Virus record (IMG/VR): IMGVR_UViG_3300043399_000272
Location: 62,001 to 126,000 of that record
Direction: 5' to 3' (one strand)
DNA: 64,000 nucleotides
The notes below the pieces were generated by a model. The model made no database searches, was not told where the DNA came from, and saw only the letters and a program-made list of their open reading frames with translations. Below, one piece after another: positions 6,021 to 15,682 of this stretch (positions are counted from its first letter, which is position 1; each line of letters starts with the position of its first letter). Position numbers and translations under genes: made by a program.

Positions 6021-6941
6021 ATGACTAAGAAAAAATATTATTTTATGGCTGGACTACCTAGAAGCGGTAGTACTATGCTATCAGCTATTTTAAATCAAAA
6101 CCCTAGATTTTATTCAGGACCTAGTTCTCCTGTAATACCTACAATGCTAGCGATAGAGAATTCTTTAAGCAATGATGAATTGTTCTTGGCTTATCCTAAA
6201 ATAGACTTTGGGAAGAATCTGATAGCTTCTGTTATGGATCATTACTACGCAGATGTAGATAAGCCAATTGTATTTGAGAAGAACCGTAGCTGGGTTAATA
6301 GAATGGAGTATATCAAAGGTTATTTTGGAATTGAACACCCTAAAGTATTGTACCCAGTACGAGATGTTTCTGAAATCTTAGCTTCATTTATATCTATGAT
6401 TAATAGAAACCCGCATATTATTAACGACCGCATCAACTTCATTGACCAGGCACTTGTTCAACAAGGCATACCAATCAATGATGTTACTCGCTGCCAAGCT
6501 ATTGCCGGTCCCGGTATCTTGGGTCAATCGTTTGATGGACTAAAGAAGGCGTTAGCTGAAGGATATAGAGCAAATATTCATTTCATTGAGTACAAAGACT
6601 TAGTTAATAATCCACGTGAAACAATGAAGAAAGTGTATGAATTCTTAGGTGAACCGGAATATCATCACGATTTTAAGAATCTAAAGAACTTGCACAGAGA
6701 AGACGATGTAAAAATCTATGGTTTTATTGACATGCACGAAGTCAGACCCGAAGTCAAATCAACAGCACTTTATCCAGAAGATGTATTACCTGCTAGTGTA
6801 TTAGACAGTGTACGTGGTGCAGAATTCTGGCGTGAAATAGATGATGTACCACTTAGTGATAGCACTGATACTGAAATTAAGCCACAACAGAGCTTTTTTG
6901 GACAAGTAATCAATGATGATAGTGATACTAAGCTAATCTAA
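6021..6941 (+). CDS. PAPS-dependent sulfotransferase family protein
   Basis: 5'-PSB loop GLPRSGSTML; 3'-PB motif VRDVSEILASF; IEYKDLV.NP. Confidence 0.85.
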   Translation: MTKKKYYFMAGLPRSGSTMLSAILNQNPRFYSGPSSPVIPTMLAIENSLSNDELFLAYPKIDFGKNLIASVMDHYYADVDKPIVFEKNRSWVNRMEYIKGYFGIEHPKVLYPVRDVSEILASFISMINRNPHIINDRINFIDQALVQQGIPINDVTRCQAIAGPGILGQSFDGLKKALAEGYRANIHFIEYKDLVNNPRETMKKVYEFLGEPEYHHDFKNLKNLHREDDVKIYGFIDMHEVRPEVKSTALYPEDVLPASVLDSVRGAEFWREIDDVPLSDSTDTEIKPQQSFFGQVINDDSDTKLI

Positions 6942-6943
6942 AC

Positions 6944-6975
6944 ATAAAGGTCTCTAAACGAGGCCTTTATTTTTT
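6944..6975 (+). terminator. intrinsic terminator
   Basis: ATAAAGGTCTC-TAAAC-GAGGCCTTTAT stem (one G-U pair) followed by a T run. Confidence 0.75.
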
Positions 6976-7041
6976 CCTACCTTTTTTTGTACATTCTTTG
7001 TTTAGGCATAAATTATAATATACATTTTATAAAGGTAAACC

Positions 7042-7266
7042 ATGGAACATCCAATTTTCAACATTCAACTTACACTTGATCAAGTAAACCTAATTCTAGC
7101 TACTGTAGGTAAATTACCATACGAGTCAATTGCCCCATTGATGAATTCTATTCAAGTTCAAGCTAGTACACAAATGCAGCAGTATAATGCTGCCACCGCA
7201 CAACAAGCAGAAGCAGAATCACAAGCATCACAAGCATCAGAAGATACAGGCAATATTATTCAATAA
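7042..7266 (+). CDS. small hypothetical protein
   Basis: 74 aa, AAAGG SD upstream, helical sequence. Confidence 0.7.
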   Translation: MEHPIFNIQLTLDQVNLILATVGKLPYESIAPLMNSIQVQASTQMQQYNAATAQQAEAESQASQASEDTGNIIQ

Positions 7267-7275
7267 GGAATAAAG

Positions 7276-8070
7276 ATGGTACAGCGTATACTAGTTATGG
7301 GTTTACCTGGTGCAGGCAAAACTTACCTGTCTCAACACATCTTAGAGCATTTACAGATCAACGGTAAAAAAGTAGGTTGGTTAAATGCGGATGATGTTCG
7401 CAAGAAGTATAACGACTGGGATTTCAGCAAGGAAGGACGTATCCGTCAAAGTTTACGCATGCGTGAACTTGCTGATTCTATGGTTGATATGGACTTTGTA
7501 ATCTGTGATTTTGTTGCACCATTGATTGAAATGCGTAACAACTTTAAAGCAGATTGGACTATTTGGGTCGACACCATAGATAAAGGTCGTTTTGAAGATA
7601 CAAACAAAGTTTTTATACCACCTGAAGTCTATGATTTCAGAATCACTGAACAAAAATCAGAATGGTGGGGTGAATTTATTGCTGCACATATGATTGATAA
7701 TCGTAGACGCCCTACTTTTGACTGGAAAAAAGAAACAGTTCAAATGTTAGGTCGTTGGCAACCATGGCACGAAGGGCATCGTGCATTGTTTGATCGTGCA
7801 ATTGCTAAAACTGGGCAAGTTGTGATTCAAATTCGTGACTGTCAAGGTTGGCAAGGTTCTAATCCTTTTGCGATTGAACAAGTCAAACACTATATCAAGC
7901 GTGATTTAGATCCTCTATATCAAGGTCAATATGAAATTCAAGTTGTTCCTAACATCGTAAACATTACATATGGGCGTGATGTTGGTTACAAGATTGAACA
8001 AGAAGTTTTTGATGATGCCATTCATTCTATTAGCGCAACGAAGATTCGTAAATCATTGGGCCTAAAGTGA
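7276..8070 (+). CDS. cysC: adenylylsulfate kinase-like domain fused to an HxGH nucleotidyltransferase domain
   Basis: P-loop GLPGAGKT, LNADDVR, DWDFSKEGRIRQ; C-terminal GRWQPWHEGH and ISATKIR. Confidence 0.75.
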   Translation: MVQRILVMGLPGAGKTYLSQHILEHLQINGKKVGWLNADDVRKKYNDWDFSKEGRIRQSLRMRELADSMVDMDFVICDFVAPLIEMRNNFKADWTIWVDTIDKGRFEDTNKVFIPPEVYDFRITEQKSEWWGEFIAAHMIDNRRRPTFDWKKETVQMLGRWQPWHEGHRALFDRAIAKTGQVVIQIRDCQGWQGSNPFAIEQVKHYIKRDLDPLYQGQYEIQVVPNIVNITYGRDVGYKIEQEVFDDAIHSISATKIRKSLGLK

Positions 8071-8499: not shown

Positions 8500-9600
8500 T
8501 TACAAGCTGGGTAACGCCTCATAATCGATTGCATCACTCATAACACCAATAACATAGTTAGTAGATTCATTCTCTTGTAACGCAGTTTGCTTTTTACTAG
8601 TATCAGAATGTTTGTTAAACCAAGGAATAGGTGTTGTCTTTGGGTGAGGTTCTGTGTACTTAATACCGATTTCTTTCAATGCACTAACCGCAGTGTAATC
8701 AACAAAATCTTTAAGAACAGTCGCATTTAGACCAATAACTGGTCCTTTTTGAAACAAGTAATCTGCCCATTCTTTTTCTTCACGAATTACATCTAAGTAA
8801 ATTTTATAAACTTCGTCTTTAGTTTCTTCTGCAATTTTAGCAAAACGTGAGTCTTCTTTAACAACTTGGTTAATTAAGAAAGCAGTCCAACCTTTGTGTA
8901 ATAGTTCGTCTTGTAGAATCAAACTGATGATGTTGCCATTACCAATAAAGATTTTGTTTTCTACCATTGCTAGACTTGTCGCAAAAGAAACCATAAATCT
9001 AAATGCTTCTAATGCATAACTAGCGTGTAGTGCTAGATAGATTGCTTTAATGTGTTCATCTTCAGTAACAGTTTCACCTAGTTCTTTGCGACAGTTAATT
9101 TGGTGTAGTGCTTCATAGTAATTACCGACGCTAGAAGCCATACTAACAATTTCTTGTGTATCATGAATAGTGTTGAATACTTCTTTAGGAACATTGTAGA
9201 TGTTACGAATAATATGGCTGTAACTACGACTATGAATGTTTGTTTCAAAGAATGTCCAGTTATAAACTAGTGCTTCTAGTTCAGGTAAACTGATTACAGG
9301 TGTAAAAATCTGACTAGGACCTCTTCCCTGTAAACTATCTAGTGCAGTCTGACGCAATAAATTACTCGTAAAAATATGACGAACAGTTTCACTAGCATCT
9401 TTGAAATCACTAGCATCTTTAGTTAAACTGATTTCTTCCGGGACCCAAAAGAATCCACGTGCAGTTTGTTCAAAATCTGCAATCTTTTTATATTTTACTT
9501 CTTCGAATCGTTGAATAGTTACCGGGCCTTCTGGGTCTAGAAACATTTTGCGACTAAGATAATCTGTTTTTGTGTTTAAGTTATATTGTGCTTGGCTCAT
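8500..9600 (-). CDS. nrdB: ribonucleotide reductase class Ia beta subunit
   Basis: LDSLQGR, ETNIHSRSY, LEAFRF, DELLH iron ligands and radical Tyr; C-terminal NYVIG. Confidence 0.97.
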   Translation of the reverse strand: MSQAQYNLNTKTDYLSRKMFLDPEGPVTIQRFEEVKYKKIADFEQTARGFFWVPEEISLTKDASDFKDASETVRHIFTSNLLRQTALDSLQGRGPSQIFTPVISLPELEALVYNWTFFETNIHSRSYSHIIRNIYNVPKEVFNTIHDTQEIVSMASSVGNYYEALHQINCRKELGETVTEDEHIKAIYLALHASYALEAFRFMVSFATSLAMVENKIFIGNGNIISLILQDELLHKGWTAFLINQVVKEDSRFAKIAEETKDEVYKIYLDVIREEKEWADYLFQKGPVIGLNATVLKDFVDYTAVSALKEIGIKYTEPHPKTTPIPWFNKHSDTSKKQTALQENESTNYVIGVMSDAIDYEALPSL

Positions 9601-10184
9601 TTTTTCTTTACATTTAAAATTATATCAGCGAATGGATCAGGTGCAGCTACTGGGTGCTTAGCACATGCTTTGGGATCTCCTTGACCTGCTTCTGTTAAGA
9701 ATTCAATTCCTTTAGCAATCTGTCCAATTGGGCAGCTACAGTCTGCAACAGTAGTACCGTTAATGGGATCTTTTTTGTATCTACACATCATACCCCAGCA
9801 ATTAGCAGACCCTTGTGCTACGTCTCCTGAGCAAGATTGAACTTTCGCTCTTGTAGCACTCTTTGGAGTTTGTACAAAGTTATTTGCTTCTTGTGGATAA
9901 TGAATGCGAGGAGCAAATAGACTCCATACTTGCGTAGTAGGATCATCTACATTACATGACCCTTTCATTACACCAGCACTTAAATCTGCAATACTAGGAC
10001 CCTCTAGTACTGGACATTTACAAACAACTTCTGGGTATGAAACACCGTTATTAGTTGTAATAGTTTTTCCAGTCTTAGTACAAGTGCTAGCCGCACACAA
10101 TGCATACTTACCATTACAAATAGTAAGATCACCGGCAAATACGGACGTTGCAAAGAATAGAAATAATAGAATAATTTTTTTCAT
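9597..10184 (-). CDS. secreted cysteine-rich hypothetical protein
   Basis: Sec-type signal peptide MKKIILLFLFFATSVFA; 12 Cys in the mature part. Confidence 0.7.
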   Translation of the reverse strand: MKKIILLFLFFATSVFAGDLTICNGKYALCAASTCTKTGKTITTNNGVSYPEVVCKCPVLEGPSIADLSAGVMKGSCNVDDPTTQVWSLFAPRIHYPQEANNFVQTPKSATRAKVQSCSGDVAQGSANCWGMMCRYKKDPINGTTVADCSCPIGQIAKGIEFLTEAGQGDPKACAKHPVAAPDPFADIILNVKKK

Positions 10185-10194
10185 AATTTTTCAC

Positions 10195-11400
10195 TTAAAA
10201 TTGATCTTCTTCAGTTGAATGTTTATTAGCAACTGTAGACTTTGCTCCAACTGCTTCACTAATTAGGTCGAAATATCCAACACCTACTTCACGTTGATGT
10301 TTGACTGTGGTAAAGCCACGGTCTTGTGCAGCAAACTCTCGTTGTTGCATTTCACTGTAACCTGCCATGCCTCTTGCCTTGTAAGCCTCTGCTAGTTCGA
10401 ATGTAGCTAAGTTTACACTATGAAAGCCTGCAAGTGTAATGAATTGGAACTTATAACCCAATTCTCCTAGTTCTCTTTGGAATGTTTCACATTCGTCTTC
10501 ACTCAAAAACTTACGCCAATTAAAACTAGGACTGCAATTATAGGCAAGCATTTGGTCAGGATACTGTGCATGGATGGCGTCAGCGAACTTTCTAGCTTGT
10601 GCGATATCAGGCGTTGAAGTTTCGAACCATAAGAGATCAGCGTAAGGGGCATAAGCAAGACCTCTGCTAATACAAGCATCAATACCGTTTTTAAATTTGT
10701 AAAAACCTTCTTCAGTTCTTTCATTGATTACAAAGTCCTTGTCTAATGGGTCGTGGTCACTAGTAATAAGTGTAGCTGCTTCGGCATCTGTTCGTGCCAT
10801 AATAACAGTATCAACACCTGCAACATCTGCTGCTAGTCGTGCAGCATTCAATGTACGAATCATTTGGCTTGTGGGTACTAGAACTTTACCACCCAAGTGA
10901 CCACATTTCTTTTCACTAGCTAATTGGTCTTCAAAGTGTACACCAGCGGCGCCTGCTTCAATCATTGCTGCCATTAGCTCATATGCATTCAATGCACCAC
11001 CGAACCCAGCTTCTGCATCTGCAACGATAGGCAAGAAATAGTCTGTTTCAACTTTGCCTTCGCTGTGTTCAATTTGGTCTGCACGACGGAAAGCGTTGTT
11101 AATACCTTTAACAACACGAGGTACAGAATCAACAGGATAGAGTGATTGATCCGGGTATGTTTGATTTGAGGTATTGTTTGCACCGGCAACTTGCCATCCT
11201 GACAAGTAAATTGCTTTTAAGCCAGCTTTAGCATGTTGTACTGCCATTTGTCCATTATATGCACCTAGTGTATTGATGTATGGTTCTGTTGCTAGCAATT
11301 CACGTAGTTTTGTCGCTCCGCGTTTCGCTAGTGTGTGTTCAATCTGTACGCTACCTTGTAGCTTTTTAACTGTGTCTTGTGTGTAGTTTCTCTTTTTCAT
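10195..11400 (-). CDS. aceA: isocitrate lyase
   Basis: [25 protein letters not shown], catalytic [27 protein letters not shown]. Confidence 0.97.
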
Positions 11401-11409
11401 TTAGTTTCC

Positions 11410-11733
11410 TTATACTCTAAAACTTTCTCCGCACCCGCATCTATCACGTTCATTCGGGTTCTTAAATTCAAATCCTTCATTCAATCCATTACGTACATAA
11501 TCAATTACGGTGCCATACAAATAAGGTCGATATTTTGGATCCATAAATACTTTGACTCCGTTGCTCTCGTGATGTTCTATGCAATGCGGGTTTTCGTTAT
11601 CTAAAAATTCAAGCACGTAAGCTAGACCACTGCAACCAGTAGTTTTAACACCTATTAGAACACCCAATCCTTTTCCGCGCTTACTGATTTGTTGTTTGAT
11701 TTTTTTAGCAGCAATATCAGTGACTGTTATCAT
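11410..11733 (-). CDS. iscA: A-type Fe-S carrier IscA
   Basis: GVKTTGCSGLAY and C-terminal CGCGESF. Confidence 0.93.
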   Translation of the reverse strand: MITVTDIAAKKIKQQISKRGKGLGVLIGVKTTGCSGLAYVLEFLDNENPHCIEHHESNGVKVFMDPKYRPYLYGTVIDYVRNGLNEGFEFKNPNERDRCGCGESFRV

Positions 11734-12103
11734 GCTTCTTCCTGTAATCTTCTACTGCGGCTTTAATAGCGTCTTCGGCTAAGATTGAACAATGAATTTT
11801 AACAGGGGGCAATGCAAGTTCTTCTGCGATTTGACTATTCTTTAATGCTGCTGCTTCGTCCAACGTTTTGCCTTTGACCCACTCAGTAACAAGACTACTG
11901 GATGCGATGGCAGAGCCACAGCCGTATGTTTTAAACTTTGCATCAGTAATAATACCATCTTCTACTTTTATCTGTAGTTTCATCACATCACCGCAAGCTG
12001 GGGCACCGACCATACCAGTACCTACATCAACGTCATCTTTTGAAAACGATCCTACATTTCTAGGATTTTCATAATGATCTATAACTGCTTCGCTATATGC
12101 CAT
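11717..12103 (-). CDS. iscU: Fe-S scaffold IscU
   Basis: YSEAVIDHYENPRNVG, APACGD, YGCGSAIASSS, LPPVKIHCS; all three Cys intact. Confidence 0.97.
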   Translation of the reverse strand: MAYSEAVIDHYENPRNVGSFSKDDVDVGTGMVGAPACGDVMKLQIKVEDGIITDAKFKTYGCGSAIASSSLVTEWVKGKTLDEAAALKNSQIAEELALPPVKIHCSILAEDAIKAAVEDYRKKHDNSH

Positions 12104-12116
12104 ATCCGTCTCCTAT

Positions 12117-12443
12117 TTAAATTGAAAAGCTACTACCACATCCACATGTAGTTTCTGCATTAGGGTTACTGATACTGAAACTACTGCCCATTAAATCTTC
12201 TTTGTAGTCAATTACTGCACCTGTCAAATATTGCATACTCATTGCATCAACTACAACTTTATATTTCTCGTCAACTGGAAATTCAAAATCATCTTCGTTT
12301 TGTTCAGGGTCAAACGTAAAACCGTACTGAAAACCTGAACACCCGCCACCTTGAACGAATGTCCTAAGTTTTAAATTTGCATCATTTTCTTCATTAAGAA
12401 GGTCAACGATTTTGAACTTTGCTGATTCTGTTATGGTAATCAT
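12117..12443 (-). CDS. erpA: A-type Fe-S carrier ErpA-like
   Basis: [16 protein letters not shown] and CGCGSSF. Confidence 0.9.
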
Positions 12444-14755
12444 AATTTACATGCTTCACAATCTTCTTCTATCAGTTCGATGTTGTTAGGTAAATCTAAA
12501 ACTGCCTCGTCTTTTTGTTTACTTCCTTGTTTATTAATCAATGAGTAATAGAATGTCTTAATACCCCACATCTGAGATTGCATTAGATTCTTAGCAATCA
12601 ATGTTGTCGGTACTTTACGACCTTCAAAATGTGCAGGATTATAGAAAGTATTTGTTGAAATAGATTGGTCAACATATGCTTGCAATACAGCGGCTGTTTT
12701 TAGATACGCATCGCAATCTTTCTGTTCCCACATTAACTGATATTTATTCTTTAACTTATGGTATTCAGGTACAACTTGAGTAAACGATCCTGCTTTACTT
12801 TCTTTGACAGTAATCAAACTCATTGGCATTTCGATACCGTTAGTTGAGTTAATAACAACGCTAGAACTTTCAACAGGTGCAATAGCCATTTGAGTAGCGT
12901 TTCGTACTCCATAAGCTCTCATTTGGGCACGAAGGCCTTCCCAATTTAACTCTGGCGTAAAGTCTGCTAATTCATTGACACCTGGTGCTCTGCGCTCCCA
13001 AGGGAAGATACCTTGACCATAATATGTCTTATCGCTATCAACACATCTACCTCTTTCCTGTGCTAACTCAACACTAGCTTCAGTCAAGTAGAATGCTTGA
13101 TGTTCCATAAAAGATTTTACTTCCTTCAGTGCTTCTTCTGTACCATACTTTAGTCCACGTTTGGCATGCCAGTAAGCTAAGTTAGTAACACCGATACCCA
13201 ATGGGCGGATCTCGTCATTGCTTAATTTACTTTGTATACTCAAGAAATCTTGGTAATCAAGTATATTGTTAAGGCTACGGTGCAAAATACGGCAAGCACG
13301 GCGCATGTCTTCTGGATTACGGAAGGCGCCCCAGTTGATTGATCCGAGTGTGCAAAGAGCGATACGACCAGAATCATCATCCAGACGTTTAAAGGGTTTA
13401 GTAGGAAGAAGTATTTCACAGCAAAGATTACTCTGGTAAATTGTATGATAATCAGGATCAAAAGGACCTTGATTCATTACGTTATCGATAAAAACTAGAT
13501 AGATACGTCCAGTGTCTGTACGCTCTTTAAGGATACCGCCCTTGAAGACTTCCTCAGCACTCATTACTTTCTTTCGAAGGCTCTTATTTTTTTCATACTT
13601 GACATATAATTCTTCAAATAATTCGGTGCTCGAATAGAAAGCCTCATAGAGGTCGGGTACCTCGTTAGGGTCGAAAAATGTGATATTTTCCTTGTTCTTA
13701 AATCTACGCCAAAAGAATGCTGATAGTACCACCCCGTAATCCATGTGTCGTACTCGTGTTTCTTCTGTTCCTTGATTGTTTTTGAGAACAATAAGGTCAT
13801 CAAATTGGTGATGCCATATGGGATAGAAAACTGTAGCACTAGCATTACGAATGCCTCCTTGTGAACAACTACGCAAATCACCGAACCACTTCTTTAAAAA
13901 AGGTATCATCCCAGTGTGCATGATTTCCCCTCCACGAATGGGAGAACCTAATGAACGTAGACGACCAATCTCTAAACCGATGCCAGCACGTTTACTAGCA
14001 TACTTTGCCATCATTTCGCCACTAGCAAAAATGGAGTCTAAATCATCATCACTGCGAATGAGTACACAACTTGAAAACTGCTTGGTAGGAGTACCAAGAC
14101 CAGCTAATACAGGTGTTGCTAATGTAAATAGCCCATCACTAGCAGCATTGTAATATTCTTTGATATAGCGCATTCTTGCGCTGTTAGGTTCTTCTTTATG
14201 AAAAACAGTAGCCGCAGCAATCATGTAACGAACTTGCGGCGTTTCATATGTTTGTTTAGTAGAACGATTGCGAACTAGGTATTTTTCAATCAATTGTTCG
14301 ATTGCAGCATACGAATACTGTTCATCTTTTGAATGGTCTAGCATGTCATCCATCTTGTCCCATTCTTCTTCTGTATACCACTCTAATAGTTCAGGTGTGT
14401 ATAAACCTGTAGCAATATTAGTTTTAACTATTTCGTACAGTCTGGGAGGTGTATAGTCGCCATAGACATCCTTACGTAGCATACTTACACGTTGTTTACC
14501 AGCAACGTATTGGTAGTTTGTGTGACCGATTTCTGGATTTGACTCTACATCGATTAAATCTACGATAGCACGTAGAGTAATTTCATCGATTTCTTTAGTA
14601 GTGATTCCATCATAAAAATGTAACTGCGATTTAATCTCAATCATACTTGAGCTAACATCTGCGATCCCTTTACAAACTTTTGCTACTTGCGCTTGCCATT
14701 TTTCTAGGTTAAGTGGTTCTTTTTTTCCAGAACGCTTAGTTACGTTTATAATCAT
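12440..14755 (-). CDS. nrdA: ribonucleotide reductase class Ia alpha subunit with N-terminal ATP cone
   Basis: VTKRSG ATP cone, QFSSC, SNLCCEI, CTLGSIN, TFYY, C-terminal CEAC. Confidence 0.97.
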
Positions 14756-15037: not shown

Positions 15038-15682
15038 TCAATCAATGTGTTTAGAAATGTCTTGTTTGATTTTGTCAATTTCCAAATACAAATCTTTGAT
15101 AGCTTCGACTAAAAATGCTGTGATGGCTGCGTAGTTAACGGTTTTCTTTTCGCCATCAGTAACTGCATTTGGCATTACTTTTTCAACTTCTTGAGCAATA
15201 ACACCGTAACTACTACCGGAACCATCTGTCCAATCGAAACTATATCCCGATATTTGTTCTAAGATTTGTCTTACTTTTTCTAACTTGACTAAGTTTGTTT
15301 TAAAGTTTCCGTCAGACAATGAGTTAAAGTCAGTAGCTGCTAGGGCGCCTGTACTTGGATTAAAATACAGTTTAGAACTTGATACGTTTGCTGAGGAAAT
15401 TGTACCTGAAGTTGCAGTAGTTAACGTTGGGTAATAGTTAGCATTAGTAGAGGTGTCATCTGTGATTGAAGTACCAGCTGACACGGTTGACCAACTCAGA
15501 ACCCCTGATCCGTTCGTAGTTAGAACTTGCCCGTTACTTCCTCCGGTGATAGTTACGTTACTGGCAGAACCAAAAATTACATTACCTGTGTTTGCAACTA
15601 CGTTACTTGTAACAGTAACTTTATTAAATGTGAAGTCGCTTGTTTCATCGACTATGTATGGTTTAATTTTTACTAATGCCAT
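15038..15682 (-). CDS. short fibre protein with C-terminal intramolecular chaperone (peptidase S74-like)
   Basis: SDGNFKTN...GYSFDW...GVIAQEVEKVMP...VNY...LVEAIKDL; one ITGGxxGQVLxTxGxGxLSW module. Confidence 0.85.
   Translation of the reverse strand: MALVKIKPYIVDETSDFTFNKVTVTSNVVANTGNVIFGSASNVTITGGSNGQVLTTNGSGVLSWSTVSAGTSITDDTSTNANYYPTLTTATSGTISSANVSSSKLYFNPSTGALAATDFNSLSDGNFKTNLVKLEKVRQILEQISGYSFDWTDGSGSSYGVIAQEVEKVMPNAVTDGEKKTVNYAAITAFLVEAIKDLYLEIDKIKQDISKHID

What the first reader, a model, noticed from the sequence alone, without database searches (positions are those of the whole stretch)
11410..12443. Three-gene Fe-S kit (scaffold plus two distinct A-type carriers) lacking IscS, HscAB and IscR
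Seen: iscU with all ligands, plus both IscA-type and ErpA-type carriers, in the order erpA-iscU-iscA. Established: bacteria usually keep erpA apart from the isc operon. Inference: the phage assembled a custom minimal module that uses host cysteine desulfurase and escapes IscR control, to mature phage or host Fe-S clients.
Basis: partly seen in the sequence, partly recalled or inferred. Interest (0 to 1): 0.7.

Follow-up and report, generated by a model that had tools for sequence, protein, structure and literature searches.

The report
Jumbo-phage iron-sulfur assembly gene trio
A freshwater giant phage carries three intact genes for building and handing over iron-sulfur clusters (one scaffold, two carriers) inside its ribonucleotide-reductase operon; this is a real but already known kind of phage "helper metabolism", here probably feeding the phage's own ten radical-SAM enzymes.

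Summary
On the minus strand lie erpA-type (12117-12443), iscU (11717-12103) and iscA-type (11410-11733) genes, with every cluster ligand and the HscA-binding LPPVK motif intact. No IscS, HscA, HscB, Fdx or IscR gene was found in this 260-kb record (74% complete) or in a complete 374-kb relative. The trio is not a one-off. At least 600 IMG/VR stretches encode close IscU relatives, and none of the 80 best has iscS, iscR, hscBA or fdx nearby. Most have iscU-iscA; about a tenth of the loci also have erpA nearby, in several orders. In two larger relatives erpA lies 73-99 kb away. Viral IscA forms one clade next to Burkholderiales IscA, while viral ErpA falls outside the sampled bacterial ErpA clade. 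The block therefore looks phage-assembled. It is packed into one operon: nrdA-erpA-iscU-iscA-isocitrate lyase-orf-nrdB. The genome has ten radical-SAM genes, whereas four kit-less cultured relatives have 0-4. Best reading: the phage supplies the cluster-holding parts of the ISC relay and borrows the host's catalytic parts. Viral iscU and A-type-carrier genes, and this rationale, are already published. Verdict: new member of a known kind, moderate interest. The repeated nesting beside class I RNR genes is unexplained.

The parts
12440..14755 (-). nrdA, class I ribonucleotide reductase large subunit with ATP-cone. It is the first gene of the run, and its stop overlaps the erpA start by 4 bp.
   Evidence: Pfam Ribonuc_red_lgC 368.7 bits, lgN and ATP-cone; coordinates.
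12117..12443 (-). ErpA-type (type I) A-type Fe-S carrier, 108 aa, with Cys35, Cys100 and Cys102.
   Evidence: NF010147 153.8 bits against a cut-off of 117. Nearest solved structure is H. influenzae HI1723, 2APN. Falls in the ErpA-type side of the carrier tree, split 96*. Cysteines are invariant in 11 of 11 viral rows.
11717..12103 (-). IscU scaffold, 128 aa, with C37, D39, C62, H104, C105 and LPPVK at 98-102.
   Evidence: TIGR01999 224.4 bits against 192.4. PDB 1Q48, 2L4X and 3LVL at E 1e-64 to 1e-65. Ligands and LPPVK in 80 of 80 viral homologues.
11410..11733 (-). IscA-type (type II) A-type Fe-S carrier, 107 aa, with Cys34, Cys99 and Cys101. It overlaps the iscU stop by 17 bp, in the same order as iscU-iscA in isc operons.
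   Evidence: TIGR02011 135.5 bits, below the cut-off of 150.6; TIGR00049 99.9 bits against 58.8. Nearest solved structure is E. coli IscA/YfhF, 1S98. Member of a single viral IscA clade, 99*.
10195..11400 (-). Isocitrate lyase (aceA-like, 401 aa), 9 bp after iscA in the same gene run.
   Evidence: NF011645 690.6 bits against 562. More than 100 homologues at 93-96% identity; all three contexts inspected are phage-like.
9597..10184 (-). Cysteine-rich protein with a signal-peptide-like N-terminus, 195 aa, function unknown. It occupies the slot before nrdB.
   Evidence: No Pfam or NCBIfam hit. The ESM Atlas finds only virus-only hypothetical clusters.
8500..9600 (-). nrdB, class I RNR small subunit and last gene of the run. 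The translation shows motifs resembling the E. coli di-iron and tyrosyl-radical sites (read by eye).
   Evidence: Pfam Ribonuc_red_sm 142.3 bits. The motif comparison with E. coli NrdB is from my own knowledge and was not aligned with a tool.

Best explanation
The trio is an auxiliary metabolic module of a freshwater jumbo myovirus with a T4-like core. It encodes the three ISC-pathway proteins that physically hold clusters:
- the IscU scaffold, on which a [2Fe-2S] cluster is built;
- a type II carrier (IscA-like);
- a type I carrier (ErpA-like), which in E. coli is the last hand-over step to [4Fe-4S] apo-proteins.

It omits the parts that act catalytically or regulate: IscS (sulfur), Fdx (electrons), HscA/HscB (release) and IscR. 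The phage therefore raises the infected cell's capacity to hold and deliver clusters while drawing sulfur, electrons and chaperone action from the host. Because it is transcribed from the phage's nrd operon, it is not under the host isc promoter.

The most likely beneficiaries are the phage's own radical-SAM enzymes, ten in this genome and mostly of the twitch-domain type. Host Fe-S enzymes are secondary beneficiaries.

Shown: gene identity, intact ligands, operon packing, absence of the other isc genes, presence of clients, and wide conservation in phages. Inferred: cluster binding, use of host IscS/HscBA/Fdx, the direction of the relay, and who the clients are.
For: - Identity and intact ligands.
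- Real phage: T4-type major head protein phrog_138 at E 5e-100, gp46-like nuclease and baseplate hub. The nearest cultured capsids are jumbo phages at 65-69% identity.
- No IscS, HscA, Fdx, IscR or HscB in G000 or in the complete relative G423. LPPVK is kept in 80 of 80 viral IscU.
- Conservation: at least 600 viral stretches. The best 80 are 82-92% identical by tblastn and none has iscS, iscR, hscBA or fdx nearby.
- Clients: ten Radical_SAM matches in G000. Seven are over the cut-off of the twitch-domain radical SAM family NF033640, and nine have the CX3CX2C motif.
- Relatives with the kit have 12 matches (G423, complete) and 15 (G426, an 83-kb fragment). Four kit-less cultured relatives have 0, 0, 1 and 4 (they are not among the IscU or IscA matches in the phage collection).
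- An independent marine case pairs an A-type carrier with 12 radical-SAM genes (PMC5332604).
- Fe/Mn superoxide dismutase sits directly beside the kit in 4 of 80 loci and beside erpA in G424. That fits a role in keeping clusters intact in air.
- The IscU to IscA to ErpA order of transfer is from E. coli genetics (my knowledge: Vinella et al. 2009).
Against: - No expression or biochemical data. No RNA run was listed.
- The kit-versus-radical-SAM comparison rests on three kit-bearing and four kit-less genomes, without phylogenetic correction.
- The radical-SAM clusters lie 35-70 kb from the kit, not beside it.
- The kit's steady neighbours are RNR genes, which this explanation does not account for.
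- G000 is only 74% complete, so absence in it is weak on its own.
Confidence: 0.6

Rival explanations
1. RNR-centred role. The kit serves the class Ia ribonucleotide reductase it is nested in. It could do so by maturing the host [2Fe-2S] ferredoxin (YfaE-like) that keeps the NrdB di-iron/tyrosyl cofactor active, or by handing iron to new NrdB.
For: - The trio lies between nrdA and nrdB with overlapping or near-abutting genes.
- 17 of 23 viral loci with at least 5 kb on both sides of iscU have nrdA or nrdB within about 6 kb.
- In L066, a different phage type, NrdA and NrdB are only 22-23% identical to the window's. The order there is again nrdA-iscU-iscA-erpA-x-x-nrdB.
- L026 and L031 also have iscU between nrdA and nrdB.
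- The phage has no Fer2 ferredoxin of its own.
- Dependence of class Ia cofactor upkeep on YfaE in E. coli, and on Fe-S proteins in yeast, is from my knowledge.
Against: - NrdB itself has no Fe-S cluster.
- The nrdA-nrdB spacer is a known landing site for mobile genes in T4-like phages (my knowledge). Here it also holds unrelated cargo: isocitrate lyase, superoxide dismutase and an unknown Cys-rich protein.
- In G423 and G424 erpA lies 73-99 kb from iscU-iscA.
- ErpA is chiefly a [4Fe-4S] carrier, which RNR does not need.
Confidence: 0.17
2. Host-metabolism upkeep. The kit mainly keeps host Fe-S enzymes working after host gene expression is shut off, or under iron shortage or oxidative stress. 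Candidates are aconitase, succinate dehydrogenase, NADH dehydrogenase and IspG/H. It would act together with the neighbouring isocitrate lyase, which needs aconitase-made isocitrate.
For: - Isocitrate lyase lies 9 bp downstream in the same run, and it is very conserved in this phage group.
- Superoxide dismutase occupies the same slot or adjoins the kit in relatives.
- Induction of the glyoxylate shunt under iron limitation in aquatic bacteria is from my knowledge.
Against: - Isocitrate lyase is near the kit in only 1 of 80 viral loci (L039), and it lies elsewhere in a 338-kb relative (L208). The link is therefore not general.
- This reading does not explain why the kit co-occurs with large radical-SAM sets.
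- It is not exclusive of the best explanation.
Confidence: 0.17
3. Regulatory decoy. Excess phage IscU and carriers change the cluster loading of host sensors (IscR, and perhaps SoxR or Fnr), or tie up host IscS, so as to reprogramme host transcription or sulfur traffic rather than to make more holo-enzymes.
For: Only indirect: the phage supplies partners of IscS and of IscR loading without the regulator itself.
Against: A decoy would not need all cluster ligands, LPPVK and two carrier types to stay invariant across 64-81 diverged viral homologues per protein. No positive evidence.
Confidence: 0.04
4. Artefact: a bacterial isc fragment mis-assembled or mis-binned into a viral contig.
For: Several 'phage' records in GenBank that match IscU are plainly bacterial chromosome, for example 'Acinetobacter phage MD-2021a' with iscRSUA-hscBA-fdx.
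Against: - The genes abut phage nrdA and nrdB with overlapping stops and starts.
- G+C is 0.39-0.40, against 0.33-0.41 across the window.
- The same order occurs in an independent contig from another sample (L031).
- Eighty viral loci share the trait without any iscS or hscBA.
- Contigs of two runs from the source sample hold 0.99 and 0.92 of the sampled words.
Confidence: 0.01

Closest known systems
Bacterial ISC system (E. coli and H. influenzae IscU, IscA/YfhF, ErpA/YadR)
   Same: All three proteins are orthologue-grade matches with the same ligands. IscU matches PDB 1Q48, 2L4X and 3LVL at E 1e-64 to 1e-65. IscA matches 1S98 at 5e-34. ErpA matches 2APN at 9e-35. Bacterial IscU is 83-89% identical. 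The iscU-iscA order is as in isc operons.
   Different: No iscR, iscS, hscB, hscA or fdx. erpA is fused to the block, whereas it stands alone in 77 of the 80 closest bacterial loci. The block is driven from a phage RNR operon.
Viral Fe-S assembly auxiliary genes in marine and lake viromes (Nishimura et al. 2017, PMC5332604; lake study PMC13760526)
   Same: Phage-borne IscU and/or A-type carrier genes of gammaproteobacterial type, without the rest of the pathway, co-occurring with radical-SAM genes. The same functional rationale was proposed. iscU/nifU and erpA are both listed as lake viral AMGs.
   Different: Those reports list genes. In what I read, they do not describe a contiguous scaffold plus both carrier types, nesting in nrdA-nrdB, a freshwater clade of about 350 kb, or the single-clade viral IscA.
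Azohydromonas isc operon variant (iscS-iscU-erpA-type-iscA-type-hscA-fdx)
   Same: Both carrier types lie next to iscU in one operon (L100, L104, L117). The genome also keeps a second, stand-alone ErpA.
   Different: The order is iscU-erpA-iscA, with iscS, hscA and fdx present. Its IscA-type branch is separate from the viral IscA clade. It occurs in 3 of 80 loci, all one genus.
Mitochondrial ISCU with the ISCA1/ISCA2 pair
   Same: One scaffold plus one carrier of each A-type class, which together make [4Fe-4S] from [2Fe-2S]. The class assignment is from my knowledge of Vinella et al. 2009. PMC5437272 was listed but not read in depth.
   Different: A eukaryotic system with IBA57, NFS1, frataxin and chaperones. 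No evidence here that the phage pair forms a hetero-complex.
Phage C48C1 (Kyanoviridae, OQ984149): lone iscU
   Same: A deposited complete phage genome with an IscU gene that is 74.6% identical and has no isc neighbours.
   Different: The search with the window's IscA found no A-type carrier in it. Its IscU groups with gammaproteobacterial (Cellvibrionales) IscU, so it is a separate capture (weak support).

Membership tests
IscU scaffold (TIGR01999 / PF01592 NifU_N) | Score over the curated equivalog cut-off | tested here: met
   224.4 bits against 192.4; Pfam 177.1 against 22.
IscU scaffold (TIGR01999 / PF01592 NifU_N) | Cluster ligands Cys37, Asp39, Cys63, His105, Cys106 (E. coli numbering) and the HscA-binding LPPVK motif | tested here: met
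   C37, D39, C62, H104, C105 and LPPVK 98-102 in the window, invariant in 80 of 80 viral homologues. Alignment to 1Q48.
IscU scaffold (TIGR01999 / PF01592 NifU_N) | Assembles a [2Fe-2S] cluster with IscS | not testable with these tools
   Needs biochemistry.
ErpA (type I A-type carrier, NF010147) | Score over the curated equivalog cut-off, and better than the IscA and SufA models | tested here: met
   153.8 bits against 117; IscA model 71.8, SufA model 72.7.
ErpA (type I A-type carrier, NF010147) | Three conserved cysteines (C-x(n)-C-G-C) | tested here: met
   C35, C100, C102 in 11 of 11 viral rows.
ErpA (type I A-type carrier, NF010147) | Branches with ErpA and not with IscA/SufA in a joint tree | tested here: met
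   ErpA-type versus IscA-type split 96*. However, all 13 viral-type rows lie outside the clade of 33 beta/gamma bacterial ErpA, 98/86*.
IscA (type II A-type carrier, TIGR02011) | Score over the curated equivalog cut-off | tested here: not met
   135.5 bits against 150.6; NF007049 126.8 against 181. It passes only the wider subfamily TIGR00049, 99.9 against 58.8. I therefore call it 'IscA-type', a diverged viral branch.
IscA (type II A-type carrier, TIGR02011) | Three conserved cysteines; gene directly after iscU; branches with IscA of isc operons | tested here: met
   C34, C99, C101 in 64 of 64. 17-bp overlap with iscU. The viral clade (99*) is sister to Comamonadaceae/Burkholderiales IscA, SH-aLRT 85 and 92.
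Complete isc operon (iscRSUA-hscBA-fdx) | Cysteine desulfurase, chaperone pair, ferredoxin and the IscR regulator encoded alongside | tested here: not met
   None found in G000 or in complete G423. None in 80 viral loci.
Viral auxiliary metabolic gene (Fe-S assembly class) | Host-derived metabolic gene inside a bona fide phage genome, flanked by phage genes, recurring in independent viral contigs | tested here: met
   Phage hallmark genes in the window. Flanked by phage nrdA and nrdB. At least 600 viral stretches.
Viral auxiliary metabolic gene (Fe-S assembly class) | Expressed during infection and changes host or phage Fe-S protein maturation | not testable with these tools
   No RNA run listed; no isolate.

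The most novel reading that the evidence does not exclude
The Fe-S trio is functionally tied to class I ribonucleotide reductase. Phages place a scaffold and carriers inside nrdA-nrdB because making large amounts of active di-iron/tyrosyl NrdB in an infected cell is limited by an Fe-S-dependent step (a YfaE-type ferredoxin, or iron hand-over). Neighbouring cargo (superoxide dismutase, isocitrate lyase) would then form an 'iron and oxidative-stress island' around RNR. The evidence does not exclude this. The nesting recurs in two phage types whose RNRs are only 22-23% identical.
Probability: 0.12. Interest if true: 0.7.

Novelty: new member of a known kind. Interest (0 to 1): 0.4.

Why it matters
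Fe-S supply is a hidden bottleneck for radical-SAM chemistry and for much of central metabolism. This phage clade appears to be common in fresh and estuarine waters. The evidence is hundreds of IMG/VR contigs, plus thousands of isocitrate-lyase matches at E 1e-50 or better, the best 120 at 92-100% identity. The phages carry exactly the cluster-holding half of the ISC pathway and borrow the catalytic half. That suggests scaffold and carrier proteins, not sulfur mobilisation, limit Fe-S protein output in infected cells.

The clade also offers a natural minimal set (IscU plus one carrier of each class) for testing the order of cluster transfer. It could serve as a compact helper cassette for expressing radical-SAM enzymes.

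The general phenomenon is already published, so the value lies in the detail: both carrier classes, a single viral IscA clade, RNR nesting, and the scale of conservation.

Tried and rejected
- **IscU tree.** Too conserved to resolve donors. Bacterial IscU at 83-89% identity is as close as viral IscU at 82-93%.
- **Class-wide adjacency test of erpA and iscU.** 359 of 401 genomes have an ErpA over cut-off, but only 150 match rows are printed, so adjacency could not be computed. The tally includes one unpublished genome (G043), and no conclusion rests on it. I relied instead on the 80 closest ErpA loci.
- **Host identification through isocitrate lyase.** All three close homologues inspected sit in phage-like contexts, so there is no host signal. 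No tRNA in the window.
- **Cas4-like Fe-S nuclease as a client.** The PD-(D/E)XK gene next to iscA in L047, and its homologue in G000, lack the four-cysteine motif. Rejected.
- **Monothiol glutaredoxin partner.** The only Grx has a dithiol CPYC site, typical of an RNR reductant. Rejected.
- **DUF59/PaaD/SufT-like protein.** None found.
- **Transcription evidence.** No RNA run listed. Only the source freshwater sample holds the stretch.
- **Near-identical DNA in GenBank phages.** None.
- **Complex prediction for an IscA-ErpA heterodimer.** Considered and not run. Any two A-type carriers would be expected to dimerise in silico, so it would not discriminate.
Full report
**1. What is there**

The window is bases 62001-126000 of a 260,148-bp IMG/VR virus record that CheckV rates 74% complete. 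On the minus strand, seven ORFs run head to tail:
- nrdA, 12440-14755
- an ErpA-type carrier, 12117-12443
- iscU, 11717-12103
- an IscA-type carrier, 11410-11733
- isocitrate lyase, 10195-11400
- a cysteine-rich ORF with a signal-peptide-like start, 9597-10184
- nrdB, 8500-9600

Junctions are 4-bp and 17-bp overlaps or 9-13-bp gaps. A simple scan finds no minus-strand terminator-like site inside the run, and promoter-like hits are no more frequent than in shuffles. I therefore read it as one transcription unit. This is an inference.

Curated models identify the genes:

| Gene | Model | Score (bits) | Cut-off (bits) |
|---|---|---|---|
| ErpA-type | NF010147 | 153.8 | 117 |
| IscU | TIGR01999 | 224.4 | 192.4 |
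| IscA-type | TIGR02011 (IscA) | 135.5 | 150.6 |
| IscA-type | TIGR00049 (A-type subfamily) | 99.9 | 58.8 |
| Isocitrate lyase | NF011645 | 690.6 | 562 |

The third carrier gene is thus below the IscA cut-off but well over the A-type subfamily cut-off. The nearest solved structures are H. influenzae and E. coli IscU, H. influenzae HI1723 (ErpA orthologue) and E. coli IscA.

All ligands are present, as is the LPPVK motif that HscA recognises in E. coli IscU. They are invariant in 80 viral IscU, 63 viral IscA and 10 viral ErpA homologues.

**2. It is a phage, and the other isc genes are missing**

The window encodes a T4-type major head protein (phrog_138, E 5e-100), a gp46/SbcC-like nuclease and a baseplate hub. 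The capsid's nearest cultured relatives are jumbo myoviruses at 65-69% identity: Vibrio phage 2.275.O, Pseudomonas phages PA5oct and MIJ3, Escherichia phage Turkey5 and Sinorhizobium phage Phosso.

Family searches of the whole record find:
- no Aminotran_5 (IscS/SufS/NifS), HSP70 (HscA), Fer2 (Fdx/YfaE), Rrf2 (IscR), HscB_C or DUF59;
- only these two A-type carriers;
- one dithiol (CPYC) glutaredoxin.

Because the record is incomplete, I repeated the searches on relatives. These include one that CheckV rates 100% complete (G423, 374,314 bp). It too has no IscS, HscA, Fdx, IscR or HscB.

**3. It is a lineage trait, not a one-off**

The best 80 loci are 82-92% identical. A tblastn context survey used the window's proteins plus Acinetobacter IscR, IscS, HscB, HscA and Fdx as probes. 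It found none of the latter five in any of the 80 loci.

Arrangements among the 80 loci:

| Arrangement | Loci |
|---|---|
| iscU-iscA | 42 |
| iscU and iscA separated by other genes | 15 |
| iscU alone in the fragment | 10 |
| iscU-iscA-erpA | 4 |
| iscA-iscU | 3 |
| iscU-erpA | 3 |
| erpA-iscU | 1 |
| iscU-erpA-iscA | 1 |
| erpA-iscU-iscA (L031, the window's order) | 1 |

In the complete relative G423, an ErpA-type gene 70% identical to the window's lies about 99 kb from iscU-iscA. In G424 it lies 73 kb away. CheckV estimates for the fragments mostly imply genomes of about 350 kb: 104 kb is rated 30% and 85 kb is rated 25%. At least one fragment, L066/G440, implies about 175 kb. The three genes are therefore a common genome-level set, and their fusion into one block is secondary and variable.

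Among 50,697 deposited phage records, no genuine isolate has the viral-type IscA. The only clean deposited case of IscU is phage C48C1. Several other 'phage' hits are bacterial chromosome.

**4. Origin**

The closest bacterial ErpA proteins, among one genome per species, are 59-65% identical. They are mostly Comamonadaceae, Neisseriaceae and Oleiphilus. In 77 of those 80 loci erpA stands alone. In three, all Azohydromonas, it lies in an operon iscS-iscU-erpA-type-iscA-type-hscA-fdx. That genome also has a second, stand-alone ErpA.

A joint tree of A-type carriers splits ErpA-type from IscA-type (96*). It puts all 63 viral IscA, the window's IscA and two rows from a 'Haliscomenobacter' MAG into one clade (99*). 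That clade is sister to Comamonadaceae/Burkholderiales IscA from isc operons, with SH-aLRT 85 and 92.

A careful tree of ErpA-type proteins groups all 33 bacterial beta/gamma rows into a clade (98/86*) that excludes all 13 viral-type rows. A single viral clade is not rejected (p-AU 0.50).

The simplest reading has two parts. iscU-iscA was captured once from a Burkholderiales-like isc operon. erpA has a different or older history and was joined to the pair more than once. Two caveats apply: the bacterial sample is the set of best hits only, and fast viral evolution can push rows outward. The IscU tree is uninformative.

**5. Likely function**

The genome has ten Radical_SAM matches in two clusters, G000:C1:26975-37739 and 141863-147213.
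- Eight hit NCBIfam NF033640, 'twitch domain-containing radical SAM protein', seven of them over its cut-off.
- Nine have the CX3CX2C motif.

Kit-bearing relatives have 12 matches (complete G423) and 15 (the 83-kb fragment G426). Four kit-less cultured relatives chosen by capsid similarity have 0, 0, 1 and 4. This is suggestive, but the numbers are small and uncorrected for phylogeny. It echoes a marine T4-like genome with an A-type carrier and 12 radical-SAM genes (PMC5332604).

The trio consists of exactly the proteins that hold clusters stoichiometrically. Everything that acts catalytically is absent (IscS, Fdx, HscAB), and so is the regulator (IscR). From E. coli genetics (my knowledge), the aerobic route to [4Fe-4S] clients runs IscU to IscA to ErpA.

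I therefore propose that the phage boosts holding and delivery capacity and borrows sulfur, electrons and chaperones from the host. Retention of LPPVK fits continued use of HscA.

Fe/Mn superoxide dismutase directly adjoins the kit in L031, L048, L065 and L080, and adjoins erpA in G424. This fits protection of clusters in oxic water.

**6. What this does not explain**

The kit's most constant neighbours are class I RNR genes. Of 23 loci with at least 5 kb on both sides of iscU, 17 have nrdA or nrdB nearby. In L066 the RNR is only 22-23% identical to the window's, yet the order is again thyX-nrdA-iscU-iscA-erpA-x-x-nrdB. Either the nrdA-nrdB spacer is a landing pad for cargo, as it is for mobile elements in T4-like phages (my knowledge), or there is a functional tie to the di-iron/tyrosyl cofactor. 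I keep the latter as a rival and as the most novel reading.

**7. Novelty**

Viral iscU, sufA and A-type carrier genes have been reported from ocean viromes and from complete environmental viral genomes, with the same rationale. A 2026 lake study lists both iscU/nifU and erpA as viral AMGs.

What I did not find described in the papers read:
- the scaffold plus both carrier classes as one block;
- the single viral IscA clade;
- the scale of conservation in a freshwater jumbo-phage clade;
- the RNR nesting with isocitrate lyase or SOD as co-cargo.

That makes it a new member of a known kind, with moderate interest.

**8. Limits**

There is no expression or biochemical evidence. No RNA run was listed, and only the source freshwater sample holds the stretch. 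The host is unknown. The attempt to find it through isocitrate lyase failed, because all three close homologues inspected are phage-borne. One class-wide tally includes an unpublished genome, G043. No claim here depends on it.

Noticed in passing
window 10195-11400 (-): A full-length isocitrate lyase (NF011645, 690 bits) lies in the same gene run. The database holds over 100 homologues at 93-96% identity, far more conserved than NrdA or IscA among the same phages. All three contexts inspected are phage-like: nrdA-ICL-x-x-nrdB-grx twice, and once beside a fatty-acid desaturase in a 338-kb contig.
   Followed up: partly
window 9597-10184 (-): A 195-aa cysteine-rich protein with a signal-peptide-like N-terminus lies between isocitrate lyase and nrdB. 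It has no Pfam or NCBIfam hit. The ESM Atlas finds only virus-only hypothetical clusters (77 hits) and no informative fold match.
   Followed up: partly
G000:C1:26975-37739 and 141863-147213 (outside the window): Two clusters hold ten radical-SAM genes in all, mostly of the 'twitch domain' family NF033640. They sit among a glycosyltransferase-like gene, an Asp/Asn beta-hydroxylase-like gene and DUF2061. Their substrate is unknown.
   Followed up: partly
window 6021-8070 (+): A sulfotransferase (PF13469/PF00685) is followed by an APS-kinase-like P-loop protein. This is a possible phage sulfation module just upstream of the nrd run.
   Followed up: no
L031 4105-4656; L048, L065, L080; G424:C1:103332-103607: An Fe/Mn superoxide dismutase gene directly adjoins iscU, iscA or erpA in several relatives. 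In L031 it fills the slot that isocitrate lyase plus the Cys-rich ORF fill here. G000 itself has none.
   Followed up: partly
L066 3467-9271: A different phage type of about 175 kb has thyX-nrdA-iscU-iscA-erpA-GATase-like-x-nrdB. Its NrdA and NrdB are only 22-23% identical to the window's. The Fe-S genes are thus nested in RNR operons of two deeply diverged kinds.
   Followed up: partly
L097, L099, L185, L196 (NZ_JBBAKG01 contigs 36, 49, 31, 57): A MAG labelled Haliscomenobacter (Bacteroidota) holds contigs whose IscA nests inside the viral IscA clade and whose ErpA groups with the viral-type rows. These are probably mis-binned phage contigs of this clade.
   Followed up: partly
L100, L104, L117 (Azohydromonas): A native isc operon variant reads iscS-iscU-erpA-type-iscA-type-hscA-fdx, with no room for hscB between iscA and hscA. 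It is present in addition to a canonical stand-alone erpA and a second iscU-iscA locus.
   Followed up: partly
L003 (CAKLQH020000011.1, 'Acinetobacter phage MD-2021a'): This record in the phage collection is ordinary bacterial chromosome (ppiD, hupB, iscRSUA-hscBA-fdx, mfd). It is a mislabelled entry that would mislead a naive 'phage IscU' count.
   Followed up: yes
window 15038-15682 (-): A 214-aa ORF with a Peptidase_S74 (endosialidase chaperone) domain lies just upstream of nrdA. It is followed by large tail-fibre-like ORFs.
   Followed up: no
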